From NCBI RefSeq assembly GCF_006345805.1, contig NC_043009.1, positions 23,684,001 to 23,748,000 on the forward strand: 64,000 bases of DNA. The letters run 5' to 3'. Source of the stretch: Octopus sinensis. Lineage: Eukaryota. The position numbers and the translations under genes are program-made. Shown one piece after another: positions 9,361 through 64,000 of this stretch (positions are counted from its first letter, which is position 1; each line of letters starts with the position of its first letter). The notes below the pieces were generated by a model, which ran no database searches, was not told where the DNA came from, and saw only the letters and a list, made by a program, of their open reading frames with translations.

Positions 9361-9745
9361 CTTTCTAGTATAGGCACAAGGCCTGGATTTTTGTGGGGAG
9401 GAGATAATTGATCACGTTGACCCAAGTACTTGACTGGTACTGAATTTATCGACTCCGAAAAGATGAAAGGCAAAGTCGACCTCGTCGGAATTTGAACTCA
9501 GAATGTAGCGACGGGAGAAATACCTATTTCTTTACTACCCACAAGGGGCTAAATACAGAAGGGACAAACAAGGACAGACAAACGGATTAAGTCGATTATA
9601 TCGACCCCAGTGCGTAACTGGTACTTATTTAATCGACCCCGAAAGGATGAAAGGCAAAGTCGACCTCGTCGGAATTTGGACTCAGAACTTAGCGACGGGA
9701 GAAATACGGCTAAGCATTTCGTCCAACGTGTTAAAGATCCTGACA
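9266..9745 (-). mobile_element. SINE B tandem (dimer-like) copies with (TAA)n
   Basis: Repeated gaaaggatgaaaggcaaagtcgacctcgtcggaatttgaactcagaa units (9454-9510, 9641-9697). Confidence 0.8.
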
Positions 9746-9763
9746 GCTCACAATAATAATAAT

Positions 9764-10035
9764 CACGAAAAGCAAAGTTGCTTGCTAATTAATCCATCAT
9801 GTCCGTTTGATTCCAGGATTGTAAAAAAAGAAGGCATAAAACAAAATAACTCCCTCCCCACAAAATACAATCCTTTAAAATTTGCAATTTCAAGAATTTG
9901 GAATATGGAAGATGTAAATTTCGTACCTATAATAATTGGTGCATTGGAAACTGTAAGCCAAAATACAGACAAATGGTTGAAGGAGATTAGAAAAGAATGT
10001 CCTGTAGAGCTTCCATCAGAAGGGTTCTAAGCACT
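9764..10035 (+). mobile_element. RLE-type (R4/Dong-like) LINE C-terminal fragment
   Basis: Translation CLLINPSCPFDSRIVKKE..YNPLKFAISRIWNMEDVNFVPIIIGAL matches the restriction-like endonuclease end of R4/Dong-type ORFs; preceded by (TAA)n. Confidence 0.7.
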
Positions 10036-11295
10036 TGTAAGACCAATGAAAGCAAGTGGATACCTAATGTTACGGATACTGACCCGCTACCCACATAAAT
10101 TCTACCAGGGATCAATAGTAATAAAAATAAAACTCAGAGGTTTTATGCTATTAAAAAACAGCCTTCGAAACTCCATTATCCGTCTTGAGAATGTATCTCA
10201 TGCAAACGTTAAAAAAACAGAAAAATATCAGCGCCAGGCTAAGTTCATCCAACTCTAGTCGTGAAATTGCTGGATTTAGGTTTCCTATTAACTGCAAGAA
10301 ATATCCATATCACGTCATGTCAAGCAAATATATTAGCGTGGATACCGTAGTTTAAAAGGCTCTGAATATTGTACGCAATATTGAGAGCTAGCAGAATCGT
10401 TCATGTTGATATTGTTAAAAGATTCAATGAAAGAGCTTTGGAGATCTATGTTAGAAACCGGCTCATTTTCTATTGGCAAGAAATCTTGAAATATAGGTGA
10501 ATATCACACATAGCTGCATAAGTATACAACCGAAATGTTATTGACCTGGGGAAGACTATTGACTAACGAAATGTGTTCATCCATATTTGTTTTTGTCCTA
10601 CTTTTAATTGTTGTGTGTGTGTGTGTGTGTACAAACACATACACACATTGCGACACACATTTGTCATAATGGCCCACAATTAGTTACTCGCGTATATACC
10701 GGAGTGGGATGGGTGTATATACTAAAATTTCACTGAACATACACAATACTCCAGTCACAAAGACCTCTCACCATGTTTTTTAACAACTCTATCCCGGGGC
10801 ATGGAAACCTTTCATTGACTTCATTCGTTTGAACTCATTTCTTTTTTATGATCCACACACATATCTTCCTTTCTTACTTTCCCTCCTCCCTCACTTCTTT
10901 CTTTCTTTCTTTCTTTCCTTCTTTCCTTCTTTCTTTCCTTTCCTTTCTTTTTTACTGAAGACATTGACCAGAAGATGTTCTGATTGGGCATTGACCTAAT
11001 CGATGTAATTAACAAGTCATAGTAGACTTGCAAAAATGCTAGTTACTCCAACCTTCTCCCCCTCCTCTCCTCCCTTTTTCGCTTTTGTCCACACCTTCTC
11101 TTCCTCTCCTTCCTCCTCCTCGTCCTCGACCTCGTCATCCTCCTCCTTCACATTCTTCCTCGTCTTTGTCCACCTTTTCTCCTTCTCTCCTTTTCTTCTC
11201 CTACTCTCTCCCTTTATCCCCTCTCCACCCCGTTCCTGTCGACGCCGCTACTGCTGACACCGATCAAACTGTCTTCGTCGTTCTTGTTCTTCGTC

Positions 11296-11330
<35 letters not shown>

Positions 11331-11736
11331 GTGACGGTGATGATGATGACTGCTACTGCTTATCAACTCCAGAAGAACGAAACGCAAAATTGAGCTTGGC
11401 GACATTTGAACTCCAAGTGCAGACAATCGGAACTACGACCTTGAGACATTCTGTCCGACGCTAAAAGGATCGCACCAATTCGCTCCAACTTTGCTCAAGA
11501 CTTACCAGCTGTGACCACCTCGTTTATTTTCCCCACCTCACCATAGATATTGTGTCTAGGGCAGCATTATACAATGTGTCTTTCCATTAATTCGGTTTGG
11601 CATGAGACCTAGGACTCACAAGGGCCGAATTGGTTCCTATGGCATGTAAGTGGCTGAGAGTACATGCCCACTTCCCAGCTGTTTGTTGGAACTTATTTAC
11701 AGCTGAGTGGACTGAAGAAACATGAAATGAAGTGTT

Positions 11737-12205
11737 TTTACCTCTTATCTTTAATTCTTTCACTCATTAGACTGCGGCCATGCTGGGGCACCGCCATGGC
11801 GAATTTGGTCGAACAAATTGACTCCAGCACTTGTTATTGTTACTTTTTTTTGAAAGCTTTGTACGTATTCTGTCCGTCTATTTTTGCCAAACCGCTAAGT
11901 TACGTGGATGTAAACAAACAAACACCGGTTGTCAAGCGGTGGTAAGGGACAATCACAGGCACAAAGAGACACGCACAATATACACACGTACACACAACAT
12001 AAACATACACACACATACATACACACACACATACACACACATACATACACATACATACATACATACATACATACATACATACATACATACACTGATATTT
12101 ATGACGGGCTTCTTTCAGTTTCTGTCTTTGGTTGACCCGGGGCTATAGTGGAAGACATTTACTTCAAGGTGTCATGCAGCGGGACTGAACCCGAAACCAT
12201 GTGGT
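11737..12205 (-). mobile_element. SINE A, 5' truncated, with expanded (CATA)n
   Basis: Tail gactgcggccatgctggggcaccgcc, body and partial head ..accatgtggtt. Confidence 0.8.
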
Positions 12206-12618
12206 TTCAGGAACTGAAACCAAGATCTTACGATCAATATCTTAACCAATAAGCTACATGAGCCCTGGAAACTCATAAGGCGGGAGCTTAATCCGATTTT
12301 CATAGCGAATAAATGACTAAGATTACGAAACTCTTCGCCTGAAATGGGACGCCGGTCCGTAACAGGGTTAATTACCCAGCTATGACTGGAACCCGTTTGC
12401 TGTTGAGTATGAAATGAAGTGCTCAAGAAAACAACACACTATCTAGTCTGGGAATCGAAACCACGATCTTGAGAATGTGAGTGCAACACCCTATCCACTA
12501 AGCTACGCGCTTTCACATTAAATAGGAAAATACGGTTGTCTATGATCTGTAGGGTTGCGATTTCTAGCATGTAGGCCGACTGCATAAAAGCTATTTCTCT
12601 GGCTAGCTGCATATAATA

Positions 12619-13162
12619 TTGAGTTGTCCGGAAAGTCGGTGCCGTTTTTGAAGGAAAGAAGAAAATTCAATAAATACTTGCCATTACATTTTTAATCAAC
12701 CAAATATGAACCATTTTGTTGCACAATGCGTCTCCATCTTTCCTTTAACTTGAAAATACCCTCTTCCTAGAATTTTGGTGGTTTCATGGCAAAGAATTCA
12801 TCAAGGTATCTTTTTACGTCATGCAGGGAATTGAAATTTTTACCATTAAGACTTTTCTGCAGAGACCTGATCTCCGAAGGAGCAATATCTGGTGGGGTAA
12901 CTCATTCCAGCCGAGCTGCAGCAATTTTTGTCTGGTTCCCAAAGCATCAAGTGCCGAAAATGAACTTTCTTATCTTCCATTTTAAAGGGTTACAGAATTA
13001 ACACAGATTATAGAAACATAAACCTTCTTCCACGAAAAGATAGCTTAAACTGTGCTCTAAATGCAGGTGTAATCAAGTCGTATTTTATGGAAGCAACCAT
13101 ATTGTAAAATAAGTCGAAAGGTAAGCTACTATAAATCGGCACGAACTTTCCGGACAACCCAA
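12619..13162 (-). mobile_element. Internally deleted mariner (544 bp)
   Basis: TA TSDs at 12617-18 and 13163-64. TIRs TTG(A/G)GTTGTCCGGAAAGT..GTGCCG. Minus strand encodes GKNFNSLHDVKRYLDEFFAMKP..EEGIFKLKERWRRIVQQNGSYLVD*, a mariner transposase C-terminus. Confidence 0.88.
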
Positions 13163-14875
13163 TATTTTTCTGCAGGATGAAGTGCGGGAGTGATACAGTG
13201 ATTAGAACATACTCCATATACAATACAGATATTTCATTATAAATGTTTACAGTCTGGATCTACATGAGATGGTAATTTTATCGATGTTAGCGTATCGATT
13301 CGATATATATATATATATATATTTATGCTGGAAAAGAGAATAGTTTGGCTCAATGCTTTTAGAAATGGAAAAGATTTAATTAATAGCAAAGAAAATAAAC
13401 ATTTATTTTTGATTAGGAAATACGGCACTTAATGTTTGTCTGGCGAAGTGAAGAGAAAATTGAATGTTGTATGTTGTGATGTTTATTTCTATTTCACAAA
13501 TTTCTCAAGCTAAACTTTATTACATGTCTCTCGCTCGACCTAGAAAACAAATAATATTTAATCAGAAAGCTATGATTTCCAAGAGAGAGGAATAAGATTC
13601 CGAGACAATAATCTCTTTCTCAAAGATGTTATCATAATGAAATATAATGGCTACAATCTGATATCGAGAACAGTTCACGCACGGTTTACCTTGTATGTTG
13701 TCCGCTTCTAATGAAAAATATGTTTATTTCCTTCGCTGTTAATTAAATCTTCGCAATTTCTAAAAGTATTGCATCAAGCCATTTTATTCTCCAGCAAATA
13801 TATTTCTAATCGATATTTTGTCGTCGATAAACTCATGATCTGTTGTAGACCCCAGACGTTATACTTTAGATTTTAATCTCACTACTTTACCATACACACC
13901 AGGAATCGAAATGCTGAAAATATCAAAAGGAGTCAGCAAAGGAGTCTATGAATTAATAAGGAACCGTCTTACAAGGTTGCGTTGACTTGTAAAAAATAGT
14001 ACCCAAATCGAACTCAAGTCACTATTTCATTCTGTTAGAATAGAATTATTGGATATGTGGAACTATATATATATATATATATATATATACATTATGTCTG
14101 AGAATAAAAATAGAAATGGATGGGGTAGCCATCCATTATCATAGGTTTATTCAATTTAGAATGGCCTGGGGATAAACTTGTTATTAATTTCTATCAATGG
14201 CATCTTGCAATGTTGGCTTATGGTTCTTTGTTTTGTAATTATGTGGTAATATATACCCCGGGAAACCTCGCGCCATGTATCATTTAAAAATGTCGCAACC
14301 ATGTTGAGGCTCATCTTCAGAGTATGAGACATTTCGGTACAGCCGTTTTGGCGTCGCTGATTCAAAACAGACATTTTTTAATGTATCTTTGGTTCTCCCC
14401 CGACCCCCTTTCTCTTTGTGTTAATCTAAGTGATAATATTCCTCCTTATGTGTATTAGAAGAAAGTGTCTATGTCAATTATATTCAGTTAAAATGAAATT
14501 GTAAAGTCCCTTCCTCTGTCTGTCTGTCTGTCTGTATCGCTTCCTCACTTTATTTTTTAATGTATATAATTTGCACACACATACTTGTGTTTGCGTCTAG
14601 TGCCAAGAAGCACTGTCGCCAAAACAGGCTCAATGCATAATCGACCATGCCAAGACGCCACCGTCCAAACTGCCGCGTCCAATCGTGCCATTTTGTACTC
14701 TTCGTGTCAAACATCTTCATAAGTTCTACTTTCAGATCGACCACGAAGAAGCAATGTGTAAGGGGCTGGAGCTTCTGTTTTCTTCTGAGCTAATCAGGCG
14801 CCATTCAACCTCCCCACCCCACCTTTACCCAACAAACGCTGGAGAAAGAGGTTTATTGAAAATATAAGCAGTATC

Positions 14876-15048
<173 letters not shown>

Positions 15049-15551
15049 TGTCTCCTTGAAATATTGCTCGAAATTCACTCTTGCCACACTGTAACCTACA
15101 GGTAAAAATAGATTGTATTTATCTTCAGGTTGGTGTCTTACGGCGAAGTCAAGTTGTCTGTGGAATTGATGATAGTTTCTACTACTTTCAGCATGTCGAA
15201 AGGCCTCAAGAACTCTTAAGGGAAGAACGGAATCATATTCCTTTTTTCTTTTTTTTTTGTCTAACCTTGCCAAATTATGGCCAACTTCCTTCCATTCCAC
15301 CGCACATCTGACATCACAGTTTTGCTAATTAAGAATTGGTCTCTACTTGCCAAAATACGTTTCTGTCTCCAGCTGCTTGTTCAGCTGTGATGACATTATT
15401 GCTGTCACAGTGTCCCTGGAGGAATAGATTCAGACAGACTGTACATACATACATACACACATGCATGCATGTATACGTACACACATACATACATACATAC
15501 ATACATACATACATACATACATGTATACATGCATACATACTTATGCACATA

Positions 15552-15596
15552 CTGGATTTCACGCAGGCGGCCTGGGTTCGATTCCCGGAATGGGAA
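15552..15596 (+). pseudogene. 3' half of a tRNA-Glu(TTC)
   Basis: CTGG-AT-TTC-AC-GCAGG anticodon arm, GCGGC variable loop, T-arm CTGGG-TTCGATT-CCCGG, 3' strand ATGGGAA. Closely follows the animal tRNA-Glu(TTC) 3' half. No 5' half (microsatellite upstream). Confidence 0.65.
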
Positions 15597-15642
15597 CGCT
15601 TATTAGTCGCAGGCAAAGCTGTGTGGTAAGAAGCTAGCTTCC

Positions 15643-17731
15643 ACTGCGCATGTGCGATTAATTGTGGTGTTCGGCACCAAAGAGGTGAGACATGCTTTTG
15701 AAGCCGTCTCGAATTGAAAAGTTTTGAAGCTCCATTGTAAGGTAAGATTCTGTTTTTTGGGTCCAGTGGGAATTTTTGTTGAGAATTGTTTTTGTACAGG
15801 CAGGAAGTCCTACTGGATTCAGAATTCTGGTTCTGCCTACATGGGGCAAATACTTTTTCTCGCTGAATTGTGAGAATTTCTGTTTGGGGGCGTATTCTTC
15901 TTCGGTTTATGTTGAGTGAATATTTTTCTCACTTAATTATGAGAATTATTGCTTGTATTGTGCTTTTTGAAGAACTTTAATAATTGTGAGAACTGCTGTT
16001 TGGGGGAGTGTCTTTGCCTCCGAAGATTGAACAATTTGTATATCAATTTTTGTGGAAGTTGTGTTCCAGTTGTGGGTTCCGGGTTCAACCTAGGCCGGGA
16101 GTACCGAATGGCCGAAATATCTTTTTGCTGTGTTCCTGAACTATTGACTTTCTTCTAAACTTTATTTGACTTTCTCCTTTTTGTTTATTGTGACTTTCTT
16201 TTGATTTCTTTTTTCTTCTCGCTTTTTAAGTTTTATTTTGAATATATTTTCAAAAAAAAAAAAAAAAAAGAAACATGGCAATGAAAAAAGACAAAGTTTT
16301 GGAGTGGGAGATTATACCGCCCTAAAAGTGGTTGAAAGACCGTGAAGATAGGAAGGTGGTGTTGAGAACCTACTCCAAGTCACTCGACAACATCGCCCTA
16401 TTCGAAAAGACGGCAATTGAAAAGGAGTTGGCGGAGTATTTGCCAACAAATTCATTTCCAGGGGTGTCAGATATGCAACGGTGTAGTTGGTATTTGATAC
16501 CCCTGAAGAGGCTCGCAAATTTACTAGTCAGCCCTTGGAGGGTGAGGAAATTTTGTTCCTTCCCACGTATTATGGGAGGAGGTTGACGAAAGCTTGGGTC
16601 TGCGGGTTGCCACCCGGGATAAAACCCAAATAGATAGAGGAGACTATCCGCCAGGGTCTGTGTGGCAGCGGGACCAAGCTTCTTTATGTGAAAGTTCTTC
16701 TTGCGGCTGATTGGGTTGGGTCAAAAGCTGTTTTGACCTTTTTAACCCAATCAGCCAATCATTTTTTAAAAATGGCCGGGTGCAGGTACCCGGTGATACT
16801 TGGGGGTGCCCCCCCCCCCCAGGTGTCATCGGTTCCTGGAGTCCGGCCATATAAAGAAAAACTGTCCCGGGAACAAAATAAGGTCCCGGAGCAGTTGAGT
16901 GAGACCCCTGTAGAAGAGGGAATGAAGGCGGCCGAGGAAGCGGAGGACTCCTCAAACAGGGGCCGAAAGAGGAAGAAGGTGAGCAACAATGGGTGCTCAC
17001 TGAAGGATCCTAGGGATGAGGAGGGGAAGGCGAATCTTCCGGCCACGGAGGTGATGCACCCTCCCTCAGTTGAAAAGAAAAAAAAAAGGGAAGAGGAAGA
17101 AAAACGAGACATTGCCGGCAGTCGGTGACATAGTACCGGAATGTCCCGGAACTACGTCGGTTGGGGTTGTGCCACCGGCAGGAGAAGAAACACCGTTGGC
17201 GGGAACTGTGCCGCCAAGGAAAGAATTGGATATACCGCCCCCGGAGGAAGACGAAATATTGATCTTCTTCTATAGAGGCGGAGAGATTGAAAAGGTGACG
17301 GAAAAGCACCATAAGGGAGCACCTTTAGCCTTCACACAGGACCCCGAATGGCCTCTGCAGATAGCTGTGGAGGCCATAACGTTTGACGTGACGTTTGGGC
17401 TGCAGGGGCTCAATGAGGAATATCGCTTGTACCCGGGCAACGCTGACACGGAACTCGATTCGATTTTGAAAGAGGTGTGGAGGATGGTAGAGGATGCGGG
17501 CACAAGTTATTTTGAGGGTGAGTTATAAATTGTGGCACTGTGTGACACAAACATTTGATAATAGGCACTTTGCTTTCTTTCTGAACTCCCGGCTGTCAAC
17601 ATGGTCTGCTCTGCAGGCGGCTAAATAATTGACTGGAGGTTCGGAAAGAGGAGGAAGGAAAAAGTGATAATGTATTTTTTATGTTTGATTGACTTGTTGA
17701 TTTTTATGTAAGTGGCTAATTTGATAAAATA
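15643..17731 (+). mobile_element. ORF1-only (HAL1-like) non-LTR retro-element, copy 1a, apparently full length (2089 bp)
   Basis: TSD AAGAAGCT(A/T)GCTTCC at 15628-15642 and 17732-17746. Ends in AATAA. ~630-bp 5'UTR, one decayed ORF, no RT or endonuclease motifs. Homologous to 61932-63625. Confidence 0.8.
16275..17528 (+). pseudogene. Disrupted ORF of element 1a, putative L1/Tx1 ORF1p-like nucleic-acid-binding protein
   Basis: Stitched translation MAMKKDKVLEWEIIPP*KWLKDREDRKVVLRTYSKSLDNIALFEK..LVFDTPEEARKFTSQPLEGEEILFLPTYYGRRLTKAWVCGLPPG..EWPLQIAVEAI.. is colinear with 62484-63310. The ORF1/RRM assignment is my inference from motif resemblance. Confidence 0.6.
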
Positions 17732-17746
17732 AAGAAGCTTGCTTCC

Positions 17747-18229
17747 CGGAGGGAGGAGCCCATTCCCTGGACAGGGGACGAGGAGTGGCCTTCGCAGGTG
17801 ACTACGAAGATCATATCGGATGTCGCTATGGTCAGGGTAATGAACACCTTCTCAAAGGACATGTTTAGATACGCCTTGAGGGGCCCCGACCCAGAGCTGG
17901 CACATTGCCTAAGGGAAGTGTAAGCCAGGTCTGGGAGGAGGGGCTTTGTGTATTGTATTTATATATATTATATGTAATTATTGAACTATGTTGTTGTTTG
18001 TAATGGACTGTTAAGTCCAAAAATTGAAAAGTTGTAAGAGGTTTAATACCTCGTTTTGTGTTTGTTTTAAAGAACATGGTTTTAGAGAAGCAAAAGTCGG
18101 CGGGTGCTTTTTGTCTTCTCCCATCCTTATCATCCTTGTTTCGTTATCATTCATTTCATTAATGTCCTTGTCCAGCCCGCAAAGCTACTTTACTCTATGT
18201 ACTGCCTTTATGGCAGATGTAATGAAATA
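17747..18229 (+). mobile_element. ORF1-only element copy 1b, 5' truncated (483 bp)
   Basis: Lies between TSD copies 17732-17746 and 18230-18244. Encodes EEWPSQV.., equivalent to EWPLQI/EWPPQI. 3'UTR cattaatgt..gtccagcccgcaaagctac..tgtactg..atgaaataa is shared with copy 2. Confidence 0.75.
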
Positions 18230-18636
18230 AAGAAGCTTGCTTCCCAACCACATGGTTTGTGGCACCAGGGGCAAATGTCTTCTCCTATAACCTCGGGCCG
18301 ACAAAAGCCTTGTGAATGGATTTGGTAGGCAGAAACTGAAAAATGCTAAAAAATATGTATATATATATGTGTGTATGTATGTATATATATATTTTTGTGT
18401 GTGTGTGTGTGTCTGCTTCTCCCCCATCAATTGACAACAGATATTCGTGTGTTTACGTCCACGTAGCGGTTCGGCATAAGAGACCGACAGAATATGTACT
18501 AGGCTTACAAAGAATAAGTCCTAGGGTCGATTTGTTCGACTAAATGCGGTGCTCCAGCATCGTCGCAATCAAATGAATGAAACAAGTAAAAAAATTTTTT
18601 TAAATGTATATATATGTCTAAATTCCCTTCCACATG

Positions 18637-32054: not shown

Positions 32055-35000
32055 GGAGATAGCCCTAGGGAGGTGATTGCGGCTGCGCTGAAGAGCAGAG
32101 GCTACAAGAGGACAGCGGCTCAGATGGAGCGAAAGAGACAGGAATTCGTGCGCTCATATGCGCTTGTACGGTCGCACATTGGCGCACTTGATGCCATCTT
32201 TGAGAACGAGCGGAGCAAAGATGGCAAGAATGGAGACGATTGAAAGAAGTCACCCCCACCTGGGGACGCCCGGGAGGAGGTTTTGAATGAGAAACCTGCC
32301 GGGAAGTGAACCCAGGTCCAAGTTCTCCAACCGGCAAAAGGGCCATGGAGACGGAGAACCCGGTGAAGAGGTAGAGGGAGGGGGAAGAAGAACTAAAGAA
32401 GGACTGGAAGAGCTAAAGGAAAGAAAAAGCTCAAGCAGGACCAAAGAGTGAAACAACCAGAAATAGAAGTGGAACCGCAAGGATGGAACCAACAGCGCAA
32501 CGGGTGTGTATGTTCTACCTGAGAGGTTCCTGCTGGCATGGAAAGGAAGGTGCAGGCTGCCGCTTTGCACATCGGGGACCCTGCCACAGAGACACGAGGC
32601 AGATGGACGAACCATCAACACAAAGAAGAAAAGGGATGGACCACGCACCACCTGCCCCAAAGCGGAGGTACGCAGATGTTGTGCGCGCCACAAACAGCCA
32701 ACATGATGTTGTCGAAAGAGCAGCTGCTGAGCAACAATCTTTTTTGTGCATGGCACACAAAGATTGTACAGCAGCTGACCTGGCTTCATCAAACCAAGCT
32801 CGCAGGTGGGACTACCCACTATATACCAGACCACCACACAGCAAACAGACACAGGATGGACACCGCCGGCAACAACGTACGCCTCACCTCGATACTCCTA
32901 CTGAACATCAGAGGACTGCAAACACTCAGTAACAGGACAAAGATCCCGTTCCTGAGAGACTTTGTTGCATGCAATCAAGCCTTATGCATAGCACTTACAG
33001 AAACGCACCTGAAACCGGACATAGCAGATGCGGAGTTACACATACCACAGTATGCTGTACTACGGACCGACAGGAAAGAAAGGAGTCATGGAGGTGTTGC
33101 TATGTACATCCGTGAGGACCTCACACCCCAGGTCCTCTTGTCATACTCAAACTCGGTGTGACACACTAATTGTACATATAGGCAACTTGATGTAGTTGTG
33201 GTGCTACATATCGCCCTCCAGATGCCCCAAGCCATGTGGGCAAGTTTGAAGACTGCCTTATAAAAATAGAAGAAATTCTAACCACATTAGAACAACACAT
33301 AGGTGTGCTTCTTATGGGAGACTTCAATCTGCCCAATGTCAGATGGCCCGAGGGCCTTTCTCTCCCAGGAATGACAAGATGTGAACGAGGACAGGCGAGG
33401 TCCCTCCTGAACTCATCAACACCCTGTACATGAGAGCAGGTAATACTCCCAACCAACCAGGGCAGGTAACACACTGGATCTCTGCTTCACAAATGACATG
33501 GATCTCATCCATAATGTGAAAGTGACACCGACACTACTCTCGGATCACAACATGATAGAGCTGACCATGTACGGGCCAAAAGAGAGCACGGACATGCAGC
33601 CTACAAGAAAACCCTCAAAATCTTTCCAGCTTGAACTACCATAAGGCAAACTGGAAACAAATTGAGAAAGAGATCCTCAAACAAACTGGCCTAAATGTCT
33701 CTCCTCGCCAGACATCGACGTGAAACTTCAACAATTCATGTCTGTAATGCAAGCCATATGCTACAAATGTGTCCCAGAGAGAAAGGCCACTGTACACAAG
33801 AACAAAATCCCCAGAGAGAGGAAAATTTTAATGAGACGGCGTACGAAATTTTCAAATCGCCTAAACAAACAGATTGAAAGCAGTGAAAAGTCCCGCCTAA
33901 AAATAAAACTGTTGGAAATCGAAAAATGTCTGCAACTCTCCCATGAAAAAGAAAGAGCAGACAAGAAGCCTGGGCTATAGAAAACATAAAATCTAACCCC
34001 AGAGCTTTCTACAGTATGCCAAAGAAACAGCTACAGTGCACTGTAGAATAGGGCCACTCCTCGAAAAGGATGGCACACTTACAGGAAAACCAATGAGGGT
34101 AAGTGAAATACTGAACGAGCAATTCAAGAGTGTTTCACTCCACCCCTTGGGCATCTCCAAATCACCAATCCAACTGACTTTTTTACCACTGCAGATATAA
34201 AATCAGAGGCGGCGACGATAGATTACATCGAATAAAGGAAAGACGATGTAACCAAGGCTATAGATGAATGAAAACAGACTCAGCTACTGGCCCCGATGGA
34301 TTCCCGGCAATCCTCCTAAAAGCATGTAAGAGAGTCCTAGCAAGACCACTGCAGTTCCTCTTTCAGAGCTTCCTTGCAGCTGACAAACTTCCAAGAAAAC
34401 TGAAGGAAGGTAAAATATGCCCCATTCATAAAGGAGGTAGCAGAGCGGAAGCCAAGAACTATAGACCTATCTCTCTGAACTCACACATCAGCAAGGTCAT
34501 GGAACGAATAGTCAGAAGGAAGCTGATCACTACCTTGAAGAGAATGACTTGCTGCCCGACACCCAACATGGTTTCCGACCAGGGAGAAGCTGTTTAACTC
34601 AGCTCCTACAACACTATGACTGGGTGCTGAAACGGTTGCTCAACCACTCAAATGTGGAAGTGATATATCTCGACTTGCAAAGGCCTTTGATAAAGTCGAT
34701 CATGGAATGATATGTCACAAACTGCGTGATCTCAACATAGTTGGAAAACTGGGAGAATGGCTTCATGACTTTCTGAAGGATAGAAGTCAGGTGGTAGTAG
34801 CCAATGGGGCCACCTCCATTAACACACAAATAGTGAGCGGTGTTCCGCAGGGCACTGTTCTGGGACCACTACTGTTCATAATGGCCCTCTCAGACATGCC
34901 CTCAGCCACGCAGAGAGCCACGATCACAAGTTATGCAGATGATACAAAAGTTTCACAGGTAATACAGAACCCTGAGGACACTAAACACCTGCAATGTGAG

Positions 35001-43274: not shown

Positions 43275-44400
43275 ATCAAACAGAGACCGAGGCTAGACGA
43301 ATGGCACCGCGAGTGCTGCCTTGCTCAGAAGCAACTCTGCCGCCCGGAACCAAACGTGTGCAACTTCAATTCCACAAAGCGTTCTATAGAGGATTAGTGG
43401 AGAGGAGGTGCGACGACGTTCTCGGACAGAATCTGGGTGTCGACGAGGAACACCTGACCCGCTTGTTCAGGACAATTTTCTGACCGAGCCCTATGGACAA
43501 TCACCAAAATCCCTGGCCTGGCAGTACTATCGAGAAGCATTACCTCCTCGGGATAAGCTCTACAGGCACGGTTCGAGACACACTGGACTGACTTGACGAG
43601 ATGCGGTCAGAGCGACGAAACCGTTCTGCATGCACTCGTGCAGTGTCCAACCATTTCAGACCTGTGGGCTTATGCTGAACGGCTGCTGTCACATATGGGA
43701 CGAGTCCGCCTGTCGGCCGAGTCTATCTTGAAAGTTGCTCCGCTACCTCCCCTCAAACGGGAAGACAAAGCAGTCTTCATCGTACTGGTGGCCATGGTGA
43801 AAGAATGTGTGTGGTGGACTCGAGCGAAAGGATTAGAGAAAAAACACTTACCTCTCTGGCCAAACGCTCATCAACTTTTTCAGGTACCACTTGAAAAGGA
43901 AGGTGAGAATGGAGAGGCAGATTTTGTCTCGTGAAAGTTTCAAAAAAAGGTGGGTGAATGTAGCAAAGATGTAGCGTGCGTGTGACGAAGCCACTTTGAG
44001 CATGATCCTGTATATCGAAGAGAGAGAGAGAGAGAGAGAGAGCACTTTGCTCTCATGTGTCTATTCCCCCCTACCTTAGGGAATAAACACATTTTCCGTA
44101 GGCTTTTCTTTCCCAGGATAATCCTAATCTTGCTTCTCCTCTTTCACCACCACCACCTCCTCCTCCTCCCCCTCCTCCTCCTCCTTGCGATTCTTTTTCT
44201 CTCACATATGTGTGTGTGTAGCGCTCCTTTATTCATTGTCTCCTCTTTGTGATTCGTTTTTTCCCTCCTTTACTCGTTGCCCGTCACCAAGCCTAGTAAT
44301 GTACTCTTACTGTATCTCTTATGTTAACTCTTTCTACATCTTTATTCCACTCTTCCATTTCTCTTTCTGTAGAGTGTAATACTTGACTAGGAAAACCAAT
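43275..44400 (+). mobile_element. L1/Tx1-clade LINE 3' fragment in (CTAT)n
   Basis: SLAWQYYREALP..DKLYRHG..(C)xRCGQSDETVLHALVQC, the L1/Tx1 ORF2 C-terminal zinc-binding motif, followed by a pyrimidine-rich 3'UTR. Confidence 0.75.
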
Positions 44401-58998: not shown

Positions 58999-59440
58999 AG
59001 GCGCAGGTGTGGCTGTGTGGTAAGAAGCTTGCTTCCCAACCACATGGCTCCAGGTTCAGTCTCACTGCGCAGCACCTTGGGCAAGTGTCTTCTACTATAG
59101 CCTCGGGCAGACCTAAGCCTTGTGAGTAGATTTGGTAGATGGAAACTGAAAGAAGCCCGTCGTATGTACATGTGTGTGTGTGTGTGTGCATATAAGTGTG
59201 AATATATTTATGTGTGAATGTCTGCGTGTATGCGTTGCCCCCCCTCCATAATCGCTTGACAATCGGTGTTGGTGTGTTTATGTCCTCGTAACTTAACGGT
59301 TTGGCATAAGAGACCGATAATGTGAGTACTAGGCTTTAAAATAAGTCCTGGGGTAGATCTGTTCGACTAAAATCCTTCAAGGTTGTGCTGCAGCATGGCC
59401 GCAGTCAAATGATTGAAACAAATAAGAGAATGAAAGAAAA
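58999..59440 (+). mobile_element. SINE A, full length (empty at the targeted site)
   Basis: ggcgcaggtgtggctgtgtggtaagaagcttgcttcccaaccacatgg .. gcagtcaaatgattgaaacaaataagag. Confidence 0.88.
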
Positions 59441-61893: not shown

Positions 61894-61931
61894 AGGCGTA
61901 GGGGTAGCTGTGTGGTAAGTAGCTTGCTTCC

Positions 61932-63625
61932 GCATCTGCGCATTGGTGTTTTGCTTCAACACTTGAACAAGGAGGACATGCTCCGTCCGAAAACTGAAAA
62001 TTAAGAAGAAGTCCGTTCAAGGTAGGTGAATTTGTTTGTTTTGAGCTGGGCGTGATTTATTGTTTTGGAATTTTTTTTCAGTAAATTTCGTCCAGCTTTG
62101 GGACAATTTCGCCTGCTCTCGGCGACTATTGTGATTTTTGCTTGTTGAAAAAATGTTGGGGCGTATCCCCGCCCAAAAATTGAAGTTTGTTCCAGTCATT
62201 GAAAATTTTTGTGTTCCATTGTGGCGAAGATTCGTCTTTTGTGGATTTAAGATTCCAGCTCGGCGTACCAGCCAAAGAAGAGGGCCAGGAGTACCTGTGA
62301 CCAGAATTGTGTAGTTGCCATTTGGAACAATATTTTTTATTTCTTCCGTATTTTTTCTTTTGTTTTTCGAACTTTTCTTTTCTGTTTTCTTTTGTCTTAT
62401 TTTTTACTATTTATTTTTCGTTCGGACATTTTTTTTCTGTCTAGTGTATTTCTATTTTTGTGGACATTTGAAATTTCTTCCTCATGGCGATAAAGAATGG
62501 TGCCGCTGCTTTGGAGTGGGAGATTGTCCCACCCAAGCAGTGGTTAAAAGATATGGAGGAGAGGACGGTGGTGGTTAGAACTTATTCTAAAGTTCTTGAT
62601 TCCATCACCGTCTTCCTCAAACCAGTTATAGAAAATGAACTGAAAGACTATTTCTCCTCTGTGAAATAAATATCCCGTATGGTTGCTGTTTGACAACCGG
62701 GAAAAGGCTCGCAAATTTGCGAGTCAGCCCTTAGAGGACAACGAAATTCTGTTCTTCCCGCCGTACTGCAGGAGGAAATTAATAAGAGCCTGGGTATGTG
62801 GGTTATCCCCAGGCACCAAGGTGGGTTGGATTGAAGATACCATCCGACGGGGACTGGGGGATAGCGGGCCCAGGCTCTTCAACCCAAAAAGGATTAAAAA
62901 GGAAGAAGGTGGGCAACAATAGTTGCCCGCGGAAGAACCCTAATGCTTCGGGAGGTTGGGGAGAGACTCCGGACAAAGCAGAAGAGCTCCACTCTCCTGA
63001 AATCAGGAAGAAAAGAAAAAAAGAAAGAAGAACCGGTCATCGCAGGGTGGAGATGATGTGCCATCTGCATGTCCCGAAGTTGTGCCACCCACGGGATGCC
63101 GAATGGCCTCCGCAGATAGCTGTGGAGGTCATAAGGTTTCCCTTGTGGGAAAGGCTTAAAGGATTTGGGGAGGAGTGTCGCATATGGCCGGGTGGCCCTT
63201 ACACGACTTACATGTCTTACATGAATGAGGCATGGGAAATGGCGGGATACAGGAACTCAAGCGGCATTGAAGATAATGATGAATATATCGATGGATATAT
63301 CGATGAGTAGGAGGTGAAAAAGCCTCGTCAGAGGGTTTGAAAACTCATGTTATTGTATTATTTGTAGGGGTTTATAACCTCAATTGTGTGTTTAAAAAAA
63401 ACATGTTAACAAAGAGGTTTTAGCGCCTCCTTCTTGTAAGAGGTTTGAAACATCATATTGATTTTTAATAAAAGAAAATACGTTTTCGAGAAAAATCCAA
63501 TCGGCGGGTGTTGGGTTTCGTCTCTCATTTATTCATTCTATTTCATTTTCATTCATTAATGTGTTTGTCCAGCCCGCAAAGCTACACAATCTTTGTACTG
63601 TCTATATGACAAATTTTATGAAATA
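61932..63625 (+). mobile_element. ORF1-only element copy 2 (1694 bp) inside a SINE A head
   Basis: TSD AAGTAGCTTGCTT(C/A)C at 61917-61931 and 63626-63640. The 5' end resembles copy 1a and the 3'UTR resembles copy 1b. Ends ATGAAATAA. The SINE resumes at 63641 and runs to the window end. Confidence 0.82.
62484..63310 (+). pseudogene. Disrupted ORF of element copy 2
   Basis: MAIKNGAAALEWEIVPPKQWLKDMEERTVVVRTYSKVLDSI..FDNREKARKFASQPLEDNEILFFPPYCRRKLIRAWVCGL..EWPPQIAVEVI; lacks ~250 bp present in copy 1a. Confidence 0.6.
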
Positions 63626-63640
63626 AAGTAGCTTGCTTAC

Positions 63641-63774
63641 GAACCACATGGTTCCGGGTTCAGTCCCACTGTGTGGCACCTTGGGCAAGTGTCTTCTACT
63701 ATAGCCTTGGGCCGACCAAAGCCTTGTGAGTGGATTTGGTAGACGGAAACTGAAAGAAGCCCGTTGTATATATG

Positions 63775-63832
<58 letters not shown>

Positions 63833-64000
63833 TGTGTCTGTGTTTGTTCCCCCAACATCGATTGACAACCGATACTGGTGTGTTTACGTCCCCGTAACTT
63901 AGCGGTTCCGCAAAAGAGACAGATAGAATAAGTACTAGGCTTACAAAGAATAAGTCCTGGGGTCGATTTGCTCGACTAAAGGCGGTGCTCCAGCCTGGCC
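63641..64000 (+). mobile_element. SINE A remainder downstream of the insertion
   Basis: gaaccacatggttccgggttcagtcccactgtgtggcacc .. ggcggtgctccagc; head at 61894-61931. Confidence 0.9.

What the first reader, a model, noticed from the sequence alone, without database searches (positions are those of the whole stretch)
15628..18244. ORF1-only retro-element that inserts at one fixed site in the SINE A head (locus 1)
Seen: the SINE head GCTGTGTGGTAAGAAGCTAGCTTCC stops at 15642 and resumes as CAACCACATGG at 18245. The same break point occurs at an unlinked locus (61931/63641), while intact SINE copies (2811, 6977, 58999) read straight through. Each insert ends in AATAA followed by a ~15-bp repeat of the target. 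The insert has a 5'UTR, one ORF and a 3'UTR, with no RT, endonuclease, TIRs or LTRs. Established: sequence-specific insertion with TSDs is known in Tx1-clade LINEs, and ORF1-only HAL1 elements exist. Inference: this is a non-autonomous, target-specific parasite of a SINE. The break lies in the anticodon-loop equivalent of a tRNA-Gly-like head, so true tRNA genes may also be targets. I do not know of a description of this family.
Basis: partly seen in the sequence, partly recalled or inferred. Interest (0 to 1): 0.9.

Follow-up and report, generated by a model that had tools for sequence, protein, structure and literature searches.

The report
Gag-only retroelement targeting one SINE site
An old octopus jumping gene that keeps only the RNA-binding first gene of a LINE has inserted again and again at exactly the same nucleotide of a common short repeat (a SINE), which makes it a rare site-specific parasite of another parasite, although each of its features is already known separately in other animals.

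Summary
The SINE head is broken at the same nucleotide (…GCTTGCTTCC|) at window 15642/18245 and at 61931/63641. The same break occurs in two Octopus sinensis loci on other chromosomes that I fetched (L001, L002). Flanks outside the 39-nt SINE head are unrelated. Each insert is bounded by a 13-16 bp target duplication and ends in AATAAAG with no poly(A).

New finding: locus 1 holds two elements in tandem, each followed by its own copy of the 15-mer. One is full length (A, 15643-17731). The other is 5'-truncated and belongs to a different subfamily (B, 17747-18229).

The ORF is decayed in every window copy. It is a true LINE ORF1p of Type I: two RRM folds plus a CCHC knuckle. It is remotely homologous (E 4e-14) to the ORF1 of octopod LINEs that carry APE-RT-zf-RVT ORF2s, are themselves target-specific, and share the 3'-terminal motif.

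No RT, endonuclease, TIR or LTR lies in the inserts. The best reading is an ORF1-only, non-autonomous, SINE-site-specific derivative of a Tx1/L1-like LINE clade, mobilised in trans.

The autonomous partner was not found. The tRNA-Gly/anticodon-loop claim is unsupported. This is a new combination of known features, and interest is moderate.

The parts
15604..15642 (+). Left part of the interrupted SINE (head, box-A-like TGGCTGTGTGGTAAG region), locus 1
   Evidence: BLAST to the SINE built from the joined flanks. Head alignment.
15628..15642 (+). Target-site duplication copy 1 (AAGAAGCTAGCTTCC)
15643..17731 (+). Element A: full-length ORF1-only element. 5'UTR 15643-16274, decayed ORF1 16275-17528, 3'UTR 17529-17731, ending …GATAAAATA(AAG).
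   Evidence: 85% identical over 1950 nt to the L002 copy, which starts at the same base.
16275..17528 (+). ORF1 of A (about 420 aa when stitched): two RRM-like domains, a CCHC knuckle remnant, a basic linker and an orphan C-terminal domain. Broken by at least 3 stops and about 4 frameshifts.
16820..16876 (+). CCHC zinc-knuckle remnant (RCHRFLESGHIKKNCPGNK; the second Cys is mutated to Phe)
   Evidence: CCHC knuckle in homologues. tblastn hits at 16818-16877.
17732..17746 (+). Target-site duplication copy 2, between A and B (AAGAAGCTTGCTTCC)
17747..18229 (+). Element B: 5'-truncated copy of a different subfamily. It keeps the last ~58 codons of ORF1 (17747-17923 including the stop) and a 3'UTR (17924-18229) that is 74.5% identical to the 3'UTR of C.
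18230..18244 (+). Target-site duplication copy 3 (AAGAAGCTTGCTTCC)
18245..18522 (+). Remainder of the interrupted SINE, locus 1 (CAACCACATGG…; it carries its own ~20-nt deletion over the box-B region)
61896..61931 (+). Left part of the interrupted SINE, locus 2. TSD copy at 61917-61931 (AAGTAGCTTGCTTCC).
61932..63625 (+). Element C: ORF1-only element of a third subfamily. 5'UTR 61932-62482, decayed ORF1 62483-63310, 3'UTR 63311-63625. The ORF1 is internally deleted: it lacks the second RRM's end and the knuckle.
63626..63640 (+). Right TSD copy, locus 2 (AAGTAGCTTGCTTAC)
63641..63960 (+). Remainder of the interrupted SINE, locus 2

Best explanation
These are fossil copies of a non-autonomous, ORF1-only derivative of an octopod Tx1/L1-like LINE clade. 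They integrate by target-primed reverse transcription at one fixed site in the head of an abundant SINE.

Shown:
- The same break point and the same orientation occur in 4 independent loci (5 elements).
- Each element is bounded by a 13-16 bp duplication of SINE sequence.
- One copy is 5'-truncated and sits in tandem on a regenerated target site.
- There is no poly(A), LTR or TIR.
- There is a single ORF. Its N-terminal 210 aa fold as two RRMs plus a CCHC knuckle.
- That ORF is homologous to the ORF1 of octopod LINEs whose ORF2 has APE, RT and zf-RVT domains.
- No RT or EN remnant lies in any copy.
- The ORF1-to-3'UTR architecture is shared by subfamilies that are only 64-88% identical.

Inferred:
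- An autonomous relative (not found) supplies ORF2p in trans.
- Its APE nicks the bottom strand at 5'-GCTTCTT^ACCAC (top strand GGT^AAG).
- The RT is recruited by the clade-typical 3'UTR end (…TGGC…AATAAAG).
- The top strand is cut 13-15 nt downstream. This gives the duplication and regenerates a usable target, hence the tandem in locus 1.
- ORF1p made in cis coats the element's own RNA, which is the likely reason ORF1 is retained.
- Because AATAAA lies at the very 3' end, transcripts probably run into the downstream SINE sequence. That tail may help the RNA anneal to the nicked target.
For: Junctions and duplications.

Independent loci.

Intact SINE heads for comparison.

Three subfamilies: 64-88% identity; A versus L002, 85%.

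ORF1 homology:
- P0001, E 4.5e-88.
- 47 remote hits. P0003 scores E 3.6e-14.
- ten of the hits were looked up; the six that carry a source name are octopod.
- tblastn of these proteins hits 16311-16877 and 62520-62868.

P0003 is the ORF1 of a LINE with ORF2:
- Exo_endo_phos and zf-RVT domains.
- A weak match to human L1 ORF2p.
- ORF1+ORF2 relatives also in L012 and L013.

Fold: pLDDT 81. The top PDB matches are tandem-RRM proteins. The profile hits CCHC knuckles.

No RT/EN, LTR or TIR in the inserts.

Relatives are target-specific and lack poly(A):
- The L003 LINE sits inside (ATT)n.
- L012 is a head-to-tail array with ~6-nt spacers.
- The L004 ORF1-only element has an 11-bp TSD.

Shared 3'-terminal motif.

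Literature:
- Tx1-clade elements target other transposons (PMC4494074).
- APE domains of R1Bm, TRAS1 and Tx1L read about 10 bp (PMC1919474).
- Type I ORF1p is RRM plus CCHC and is consistent with Tx1 (PMC5203782).
- HAL1 is an ORF1-only L1 derivative (PMC5753468).
Against: - No autonomous element with the same target, ORF1 or 3'UTR was found. The searches that could have found one gave only ORF1-only or truncated copies; the ORF2 search was aimed at the L003 LINE.
- Only 4 loci could be examined. A genome-wide census was impossible with these tools.
- All window copies are dead, so activity is historical only.
- A's 3'UTR differs from that of B and C except for the last ~25 nt. Recognition of a common 3'UTR is therefore weakly grounded.
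- The C-terminal ~100-aa domain of the ORF has no detectable relative and no confident fold. Part of the protein's role is unknown.
- Clade assignment (Tx1 versus L1) was not tested.
Confidence: 0.75

Rival explanations
1. The element and the TPRT insertion are the same, but the site choice is carried mainly by the RNA and not by a sequence-specific endonuclease. Transcripts terminate 10-30 nt after the terminal AATAAA, so they end in SINE sequence. That tail base-pairs with a nicked SINE bottom strand. A partner with a relaxed T^A nick preference would then suffice. The target is 'inherited' through the read-through flank.
For: - AATAAA lies at the very 3' end of A, B and C, and within 15 nt of the 3' end in the related L003, L004 and L011 elements.
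- No poly(A) is present in the genomic copies.
- The inferred nick sites of ours (CTT^ACC) and of the (ATT)n-specific relative (AAT^AAT) share only T^A (inference).
- R1Bm needs downstream target sequence in its RNA for an accurate start, and SART1 shows annealing-guided starts (PMC7265360). Co-transcription with the target is proposed to reinforce specificity (PMC4494074).
Against: - No transcript 3' ends were available.
- The left (5') junction is equally precise in 4 loci. Annealing of the 3' tail does not explain that.
- Specificity held through three subfamilies as diverged as 64%. That is easier to explain with a protein-encoded specificity.
- The one-mismatch difference between left and right 15-mers fits post-insertion mutation just as well.
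Confidence: 0.15
2. There is no ORF1-only family. Each copy is an independently internally deleted (dead-on-arrival) copy of a full-length, SINE-site-specific LINE.
For: - Internal deletions do occur. C lacks about 290 nt, including the knuckle, relative to A.
- The L001 and L002 copies have lost their 3' parts.
Against: - A, the L002 copy and C belong to lineages 64-85% identical, yet all pass from the ORF1 stop straight into a 200-310 nt 3'UTR with no ORF2 remnant.
- Independent deletions would not share those boundaries.
- An unrelated family in O. vulgaris (L004) has the same ORF1-only layout with an intact ORF. This shows the layout is a propagating form in this clade.
Confidence: 0.07
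3. One original insertion was spread among SINE copies by homology-dependent events (ectopic gene conversion or recombination between SINEs, or segmental duplication). This would give the same break point without any site-specific integration.
For: - SINE copies are abundant and similar.
- A-type inserts sit in AAGAAG-type heads, and C/L001-type inserts sit in AAGTAG-type heads. This could reflect co-conversion.
Against: - Flanks are unrelated beyond 39 nt on the left.
- The 5'-truncated B sits in tandem with its own 15-mer, and conversion cannot make that.
- B has a C-like 3'UTR but sits in an AAGAAG head.
- The inserts are three deeply diverged subfamilies, while the junctions stay exact.
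- Related LINEs of the clade are demonstrably target-specific.
Confidence: 0.03

Closest known systems
Target-specific Tx1-clade LINEs (Tx1L into the Tx1D piggyBac element; crocodilian Tx1-Mar and its SINEU-3 passengers into Mariner-N4_AMi; Keno, Mutsu, Kibi, Koshi, Dewa)
   Same: - APE-type non-LTR elements that insert at one fixed site of a multicopy sequence, including other transposons.
- Relatives specific for microsatellites exist; the L003 LINE sits in (ATT)n.
- ORF1 is Type I (RRM + CCHC).
- Non-autonomous passengers can share the partner's target (PMC4494074, PMC5203782).
   Different: - The target here is the head of a SINE.
- The copies carry no ORF2 at all.
- Clade membership by RT phylogeny could not be tested.
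- No partner was found.
HAL1 (half-L1) of mammals
   Same: A non-autonomous LINE derivative that keeps only ORF1 and amplifies as its own family. It has arisen repeatedly (PMC5753468).
   Different: - HAL1 derives from mammalian L1, which has a Type II ORF1p (coiled coil, RRM, CTD; Pfam Transposase_22) and a poly(A) tail. It inserts without sequence specificity.
- The octopus element has Type I ORF1p, has no poly(A), and uses a fixed target.
R1/R2-type rDNA elements and their non-autonomous SIDEs; SART1/TRAS1 telomeric elements
   Same: - Fixed target.
- Fixed-length TSD (boxed for R1Bm in PMC1919474).
- Tandem or nested re-insertion.
- A role for target-derived RNA sequence in a precise start (PMC7265360).
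   Different: - They belong to different clades. R2 uses a restriction-like endonuclease.
- Their targets are host genes or telomeres, not another retroposon.
- SIDEs are non-coding.
Dada DNA transposons that target tRNA and snRNA genes
   Same: Fixed site inside a small multicopy Pol III-type sequence. Tandem insertions are seen (PMC3706591).
   Different: Dada elements have a DDE transposase and 6-7 bp TSDs, and their copies are not 5'-truncated. None of these fits here.

Membership tests
Non-LTR (LINE-derived) retroelement inserted by TPRT | Target-site duplication, 5'-truncated copies, no LTR or TIR | tested here: met
   13-16 bp duplication at every complete junction. B is 5'-truncated. 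No terminal repeats other than the TSD.
Non-LTR (LINE-derived) retroelement inserted by TPRT | ORF homologous to a LINE ORF1p | tested here: met
   E 3.6e-14 to P0003. P0003 is followed by an APE/RT/zf-RVT ORF2 in L003. The same ORF1+ORF2 arrangement occurs in L012 and L013.
Autonomous LINE | Encodes reverse transcriptase and endonuclease | tested here: not met
   No Pfam hit. tblastn of the ORF2 pieces of the related LINE finds nothing inside 15643-18244 or 61932-63640. The ORF1 stop is followed directly by the 3'UTR.
Type I ORF1p (Khazina & Weichenrieder classes, as summarised in PMC5203782) | At least one RRM plus a CCHC zinc knuckle | tested here: met
   The AF2 model of P0001 has pLDDT 81 and two beta-alpha-beta domains. 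Foldseek top hits are tandem-RRM proteins. CCHC is seen in homologues and as a remnant at 16820-16876. In each copy examined one Cys is mutated.
Tx1 clade | RT/ORF2 groups with Tx1 in phylogeny | not testable with these tools
   The element has no RT, and no Repbase reference set was available. The related L003 ORF2 has zf-RVT and a weak match to human L1 ORF2p (E 0.004). That places it only in the L1/Tx1 superfamily.
Tx1 clade | Sequence-specific insertion | tested here: met
   Four loci and five elements at the same SINE position and in the same orientation. Relatives sit in (ATT)n and in tandem arrays.
HAL1 | ORF1-only derivative that propagates as a family | tested here: met
   The same ORF1-to-3'UTR layout occurs in subfamilies 64-85% identical.
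HAL1 | Derived from mammalian L1 (Transposase_22 ORF1p, poly(A) tail) | tested here: not met
   No Transposase_22 hit. RRM-RRM-CCHC fold. No poly(A) at any 3' end.
Dada-type DNA transposon | DDE transposase and 6-7 bp TSD | tested here: not met
   No transposase. TSD is 13-16 bp.
tRNA-derived SINE head / tRNA gene as the target | The head is recognisable as a tRNA, so that the break can be mapped to the anticodon loop | tested here: not met
   ARAGORN finds no tRNA in the window. The Rfam tRNA model does not hit intact heads even at E<=10. Only box-A-like and box-B-like motifs are visible by eye.

The most novel reading that the evidence does not exclude
Target choice in this whole octopod LINE clade may be RNA-programmed rather than endonuclease-encoded. 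The terminal AATAAA forces read-through into the flank, and that flank guides the next integration by base-pairing. In A-type copies it may also pair with an ORF-internal 18-nt antisense copy of the 3' junction. Alternatively, the orphan C-terminal domain of the ORF1-only protein may itself bind the SINE-head hairpin and steer a generic partner. Either way, a passenger element would be dictating where the driver's machinery integrates.
Probability: 0.12. Interest if true: 0.8.

Novelty: new variant of a known kind. Interest (0 to 1): 0.5.

Why it matters
- It shows hyperparasitism among retroposons in a cephalopod genome. A LINE derivative uses the head of a very abundant SINE as a safe harbour, and in doing so separates the SINE's box A from box B.
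- It is an independent, non-mammalian origin of the 'ORF1-only' life style. A second unrelated case with an intact ORF exists in O. vulgaris. This argues that ORF1p supplied in cis is the part a passenger cannot easily borrow.
- It points to a little-studied octopod LINE clade in which several members are site-specific: (ATT)n, the SINE head, and tandem arrays.
- Site-specific TPRT systems are of practical interest for targeted DNA insertion. A clade with several natural specificities would be a useful comparative set.

Tried and rejected
- Pfam on the stitched ORFs: no hit.
- Rfam and ARAGORN for a tRNA-like head: nothing.
- Homology of the C-terminal domain to ORF2 tails, to the C-termini of related ORF1s, or to anything else in the databases: none. 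Its AF2 model was unusable at pLDDT 35, so no fold search was run.
- PDB sequence search of the related APE domain: no hit.
- Search for more copies or the partner in JGI metagenome contigs, which do contain some octopus contamination:
  - an exact 25-mer conserved between subfamilies gave 0 hits;
  - back-translated ORF1 peptides gave 600 pattern hits, none confirmed.
- A third protein search with the stitched C-type ORF: nothing.
- Logan contigs carrying a remote ORF1 homologue (L005-L010): uninformative about junctions.
- Complementarity between the 3'UTR of B/C (GCAAAGCTAC) and the target, suggested by folding: not significant on shuffling.
- The SINE-head hairpin whose loop equals the TSD: z only -0.8 to -1.4.
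- Rejected on the evidence listed under the rivals: a DNA transposon, an LTR element, a segmental duplication, and mobilisation of the composite SINE+insert. The last is also unlikely because many T-runs in the insert would stop Pol III (inference).
Full report
**1. What is in the sequence**

The window is cephalopod DNA rich in one ~350-bp SINE that has an internal microsatellite. BLAST with the SINE built from the joined flanks gives 27 hits, which correspond to roughly twenty copies or fragments.

The ORF in the finding matches Octopus sinensis proteins at 57-87% identity. A paralogous copy in O. sinensis is 85% identical at the DNA level. The source is therefore an Octopus species.

- **Locus 1.** The SINE head runs to …GTGTGGTAAGAAGCTAGCTTCC at 15642 and resumes as CAACCACATGG at 18245.
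- **Locus 2.** The head runs to …GGTAAGTAGCTTGCTTCC at 61931 and resumes as GAACCACATGG at 63641.

Ten other SINE heads in the window read straight through this point (sequence shown). The right-junction string AATAAAGWAGCTTGCTT occurs three times in the window, against 0.02 expected by chance.

**2. Locus 1 is two elements, not one**

A third copy of the 15-mer lies inside the insert, at 17732-17746. It is preceded by …GATAAAATAAAG, just as the outer copy is preceded by …ATGAAATAAAG.

- **Element A (15643-17731)** is a complete element with a 5'UTR, an ORF and a 3'UTR.
- **Element B (17747-18229)** starts in the last ~58 codons of a homologous but very divergent ORF (…EEWPSQV… against …PEWPLQI…). 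It has its own stop. Its 3'UTR is 74.5% identical to the 3'UTR of the locus-2 element C, and not to that of A.

B is therefore an independent, 5'-truncated insertion of another subfamily into the target site that the first insertion's duplication regenerated. Which of the two came first cannot be told.

The same head-to-tail habit is seen in a related full-length LINE in O. vulgaris. There, units with a period of 5278 bp are separated only by ~6 nt (L012).

**3. The same site at independent loci**

Two O. sinensis loci were fetched through annotated proteins.

- **L001** (chromosome CM016886) reads …GGTAAGTAGCTTGCTTCC|TGTGCATGCG.
- **L002** (chromosome CM016865) reads …GGTAAGAAGTTTGCTTCC|ACTGCGCATGTGCG.

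Both have the same orientation as the window copies. Both have lost their 3' parts.

Upstream similarity among the four loci stops at the 39-nt SINE head. These are separate insertions, not duplicated segments.

A rough calculation supports this (inference). Suppose a random insertion has about a 2e-4 chance of landing on one given position of a repeat that fills about 8% of the genome; that 8% is from memory of the published octopus genome. Three or four further coincidences then have a probability below 1e-10.

**4. The duplication**

The repeated segment is AAGAAGCT(A/T)GCTTCC at locus 1 and AAGTAGCTTGCTT(C/A)C at locus 2.

The A/T at position 4 follows the local SINE variant. This includes B, whose 3'UTR is of the C type but whose 15-mer is of the AAGAAG type. 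That argues the 15-mer is target-derived and not an invariant end of the element.

The length is uncertain by a few bases.

- All four occupied heads end in …GCTTCC|. This includes the two of the AAGTAG subfamily, whose intact members almost always read GCTTAC.
- At locus 2 the right copy does read TTAC.
- So the duplication may be 13 bp, with the element starting CC.
- The repeat finder extends the locus-2 repeat to 16 bp.

The left edge is fixed by the mismatch between the element's …ATA|AAG and the SINE's …GGT|AAG.

**5. What the element encodes**

A's ORF (16275-17528) and C's ORF (62483-63310) are decayed.

- A has at least three in-frame stops and about four frameshifts. One frameshift lies in a C-run and one in the A-rich KKKK stretch.
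- C has stops and lacks about 290 nt that include the knuckle.
- The frame change at the A-rich run differs between copies. The ancestor therefore had one continuous ORF of about 420 aa.

Pfam sees nothing in the stitched proteins. The homology searches were more informative.

- The stitched A protein finds an uninterrupted 281-aa O. sinensis protein (P0001, E 4.5e-88).
- A full-library HMMER search with P0001 finds 47 remote relatives at 22-36% identity. Ten of them were looked up, and the six that carry a source name come from Octopus or Argonauta. Several carry a CCHC knuckle.
- P0003 (E 3.6e-14) is the ORF1 of a LINE in L003. Its downstream frames contain Exo_endo_phos, a broken RT and zf-RVT. 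The ORF2 tail weakly matches human L1 ORF2p.
- P0005 and P0020 are likewise followed by APE/RT ORF2s.

An AlphaFold model of P0001 (pLDDT 81) shows two beta-alpha-beta domains followed by the knuckle. Its best PDB matches are tandem-RRM proteins: SFPQ, NONO and PSPC1, then U2AF65 and hnRNP A1 UP1. This is Type I ORF1p in the published scheme, which is described as consistent with the Tx1 clade (PMC5203782).

The C-terminal ~100 aa (…DPEWPxQIAVE…) are conserved among A, B, C and the L002 copy. They have no detectable relative and no confident fold.

**6. What it lacks**

- No piece of the related ORF2 aligns inside either insert.
- The ORF stop is followed directly by a 200-310-nt 3'UTR.
- There are no LTRs or TIRs.
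- There is no poly(A).

This ORF1-only layout is shared by A, the L002 copy and C, lineages that are 64-85% identical. It therefore predates their divergence and was propagated as such.

A second, unrelated ORF1-only element lies in O. vulgaris (L004).

- It has an intact 379-aa ORF.
- It has an 11-bp duplication (TGCTGGGTTCG).
- It ends in …AATAAAGAGAAA.

**7. Relatives and mechanism**

Every element of this clade whose 3' end I could read has AATAAA(A)G at or within ~15 nt of its end (A, B, C, L003, L004, L011). In five of the six a C(C/T)TT(G/A)TG(G)C motif precedes it. A retains only GTGGC.

The L003 LINE sits inside an (ATT)n microsatellite. The L012 LINE forms a tandem array.

The most economical mechanism is classical target-specific TPRT by a partner's APE-RT. 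R1Bm, TRAS1 and Tx1L endonucleases are known to read about 10 bp around the nick (PMC1919474). The steps, all inferred, would be:

1. a bottom-strand nick at GCTTCTT^ACCAC;
2. RT recruitment by the conserved 3' end;
3. a top-strand cut 13-15 nt downstream;
4. ORF1p acting in cis on its own RNA.

The polyadenylation hexamer is terminal, so transcripts should extend into the downstream SINE. R1Bm needs such downstream target sequence in its RNA for a precise start (PMC7265360). Kojima has argued that co-transcription with the target reinforces specificity (PMC4494074). I rate a mainly RNA-guided choice as a minority alternative (0.15).

**8. What could not be shown**

- The autonomous partner was not found.
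- A genome-wide census could not be done. The tools reach octopus DNA only through exact protein look-ups, and both metagenome scans and the last protein search were empty.
- Tx1-versus-L1 placement needs an RT tree with reference sequences.
- The tRNA nature of the SINE head could not be confirmed. The suggestion that true tRNA genes are targets therefore has no basis here.
- From memory, and from the mention in PMC4758252, the SINE's central part resembles CORE-SINEs such as octopus OR2. This was not tested.

**9. Comparison with known systems and novelty**

The element behaves like a Tx1-type target-specific LINE passenger. The closest analogy is SINEU-3, which shares the Mariner target of crocodilian Tx1-Mar (PMC4494074). 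It is built like HAL1, which is ORF1-only (PMC5753468).

It fails HAL1 membership because it has Type I ORF1p, no poly(A) and a fixed target. Tx1 membership is untestable here.

I found no paper that describes a SINE-head-specific or ORF1-only LINE derivative in cephalopods. Repbase and Dfam could not be consulted.

I rate it a new variant of a known kind, with interest 0.5.

Noticed in passing
window 16670-16687 versus 17729-17746 and 18227-18244; L002 ~12837-12853: Inside A's ORF, GGGACCAAGCTTCTTTAT is a 16/18 reverse complement of A's own 3' junction (ATAAAG + 15-mer); 0 of 500 shuffles reach this score. The L002 copy has GGAACCAAGCTTCTTAC, a 16/17 antisense match to the SINE target. B, C, L004 and L011 show nothing comparable. 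It could be a long-range RNA pairing with a read-through tail, or coincidence within coding sequence (SGTKLLYVK).
   Followed up: partly
L004:9916-11651 (O. vulgaris OX597833): A second, unrelated ORF1-only element. It has an intact 379-aa ORF1 (P0009, 30% identical to P0001), no ORF2, an 11-bp duplication (TGCTGGGTTCG) and a 3' end …CCTATAATAAAGAGAAA. Its 3'UTR resembles that of B and C. Whether its target is a repeat is unknown.
   Followed up: partly
L003:~9779-15346 (O. sinensis CM016872): A LINE of the same clade (ORF1 is P0003; ORF2 carries APE, a broken RT and zf-RVT) is inserted in an (ATT)n microsatellite. It ends …GGCCAATAAAAAGAATTA without poly(A). It is a microsatellite-specific relative.
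   Followed up: partly
L012:1453-15026 (O. vulgaris OX597840): A head-to-tail tandem array of at least three near-identical full-length LINEs (ORF1 is P0005, annotated 'EPM2A-interacting 1-like', plus ORF2). The period is 5278 bp, and units are separated by about 6 nt (CCGAYA). This looks like repeated re-insertion into a regenerated target.
   Followed up: partly
window 43275-43971 and 34671-34952: Remnants of LINE ORF2 on the + strand: a zf-RVT region 35% identical to the L003 ORF2, and an RT piece at 29%. They are not connected with the SINE-site inserts, and the 3' end is not recognisable.
   Followed up: no
window 15742-16230 (A) and 62022-62444 (C); L001 ~9586-9950: The 5'UTRs of all subfamilies keep an AAG|GTA(A/G)G donor-like motif about 100 nt from the 5' end. 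They also keep a long polypyrimidine tract ending in AG about 45 nt before the ATG, which looks like an intron. The chimeric gene model P0002 reads through the acceptor region, so this has no support yet.
   Followed up: no
window 15643-15656, 61932-61946; L001:9490-9500; L002:11741-11754: All full-length copies begin with a TGCGCATG / GCATGCG motif. From memory this resembles an NRF1-type palindrome, so it may be an internal Pol II promoter element placed at the very 5' end.
   Followed up: no
window 15866-15893 and 15982-16009: A's 5'UTR contains a 116-bp tandem duplication of a motif (AATTGTGAGAA…TGTTTGGGGG.GT). The motif is present once in C and in the L001 copy. It resembles a monomer-type 5'UTR.
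   Followed up: no
window 59012-59048 and other intact SINE heads: The duplicated 15-mer is almost exactly the loop between the inverted repeat CTGTGTGGT / ACCACATGG in the SINE head. Both inferred nicks fall at the stem-loop borders. The fold is not better than shuffles (z -0.8 to -1.4).
   Followed up: partly
window 15565-15600: Just upstream of the locus-1 SINE lies a fragment of a different tRNA-like repeat, with a canonical box B (GGGTTCGATTCCCGG). A similar sequence precedes the SINE at ~39650.
   Followed up: no
protein P0056: A protein deposited as 'MAG: zinc-binding domain-containing protein [Herbaspirillum sp.]' is 67% identical over 96% of the octopod LINE ORF2 tail. This looks like cephalopod host DNA binned into a bacterial MAG.
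   Followed up: no
L002:6001-32638 (protein P0002): The O. sinensis gene model 'K02A2.6-like' is a chimera. It joins the 5'UTR and first 45 codons of an A-type ORF1 to an rve integrase fragment of another element.
   Followed up: no
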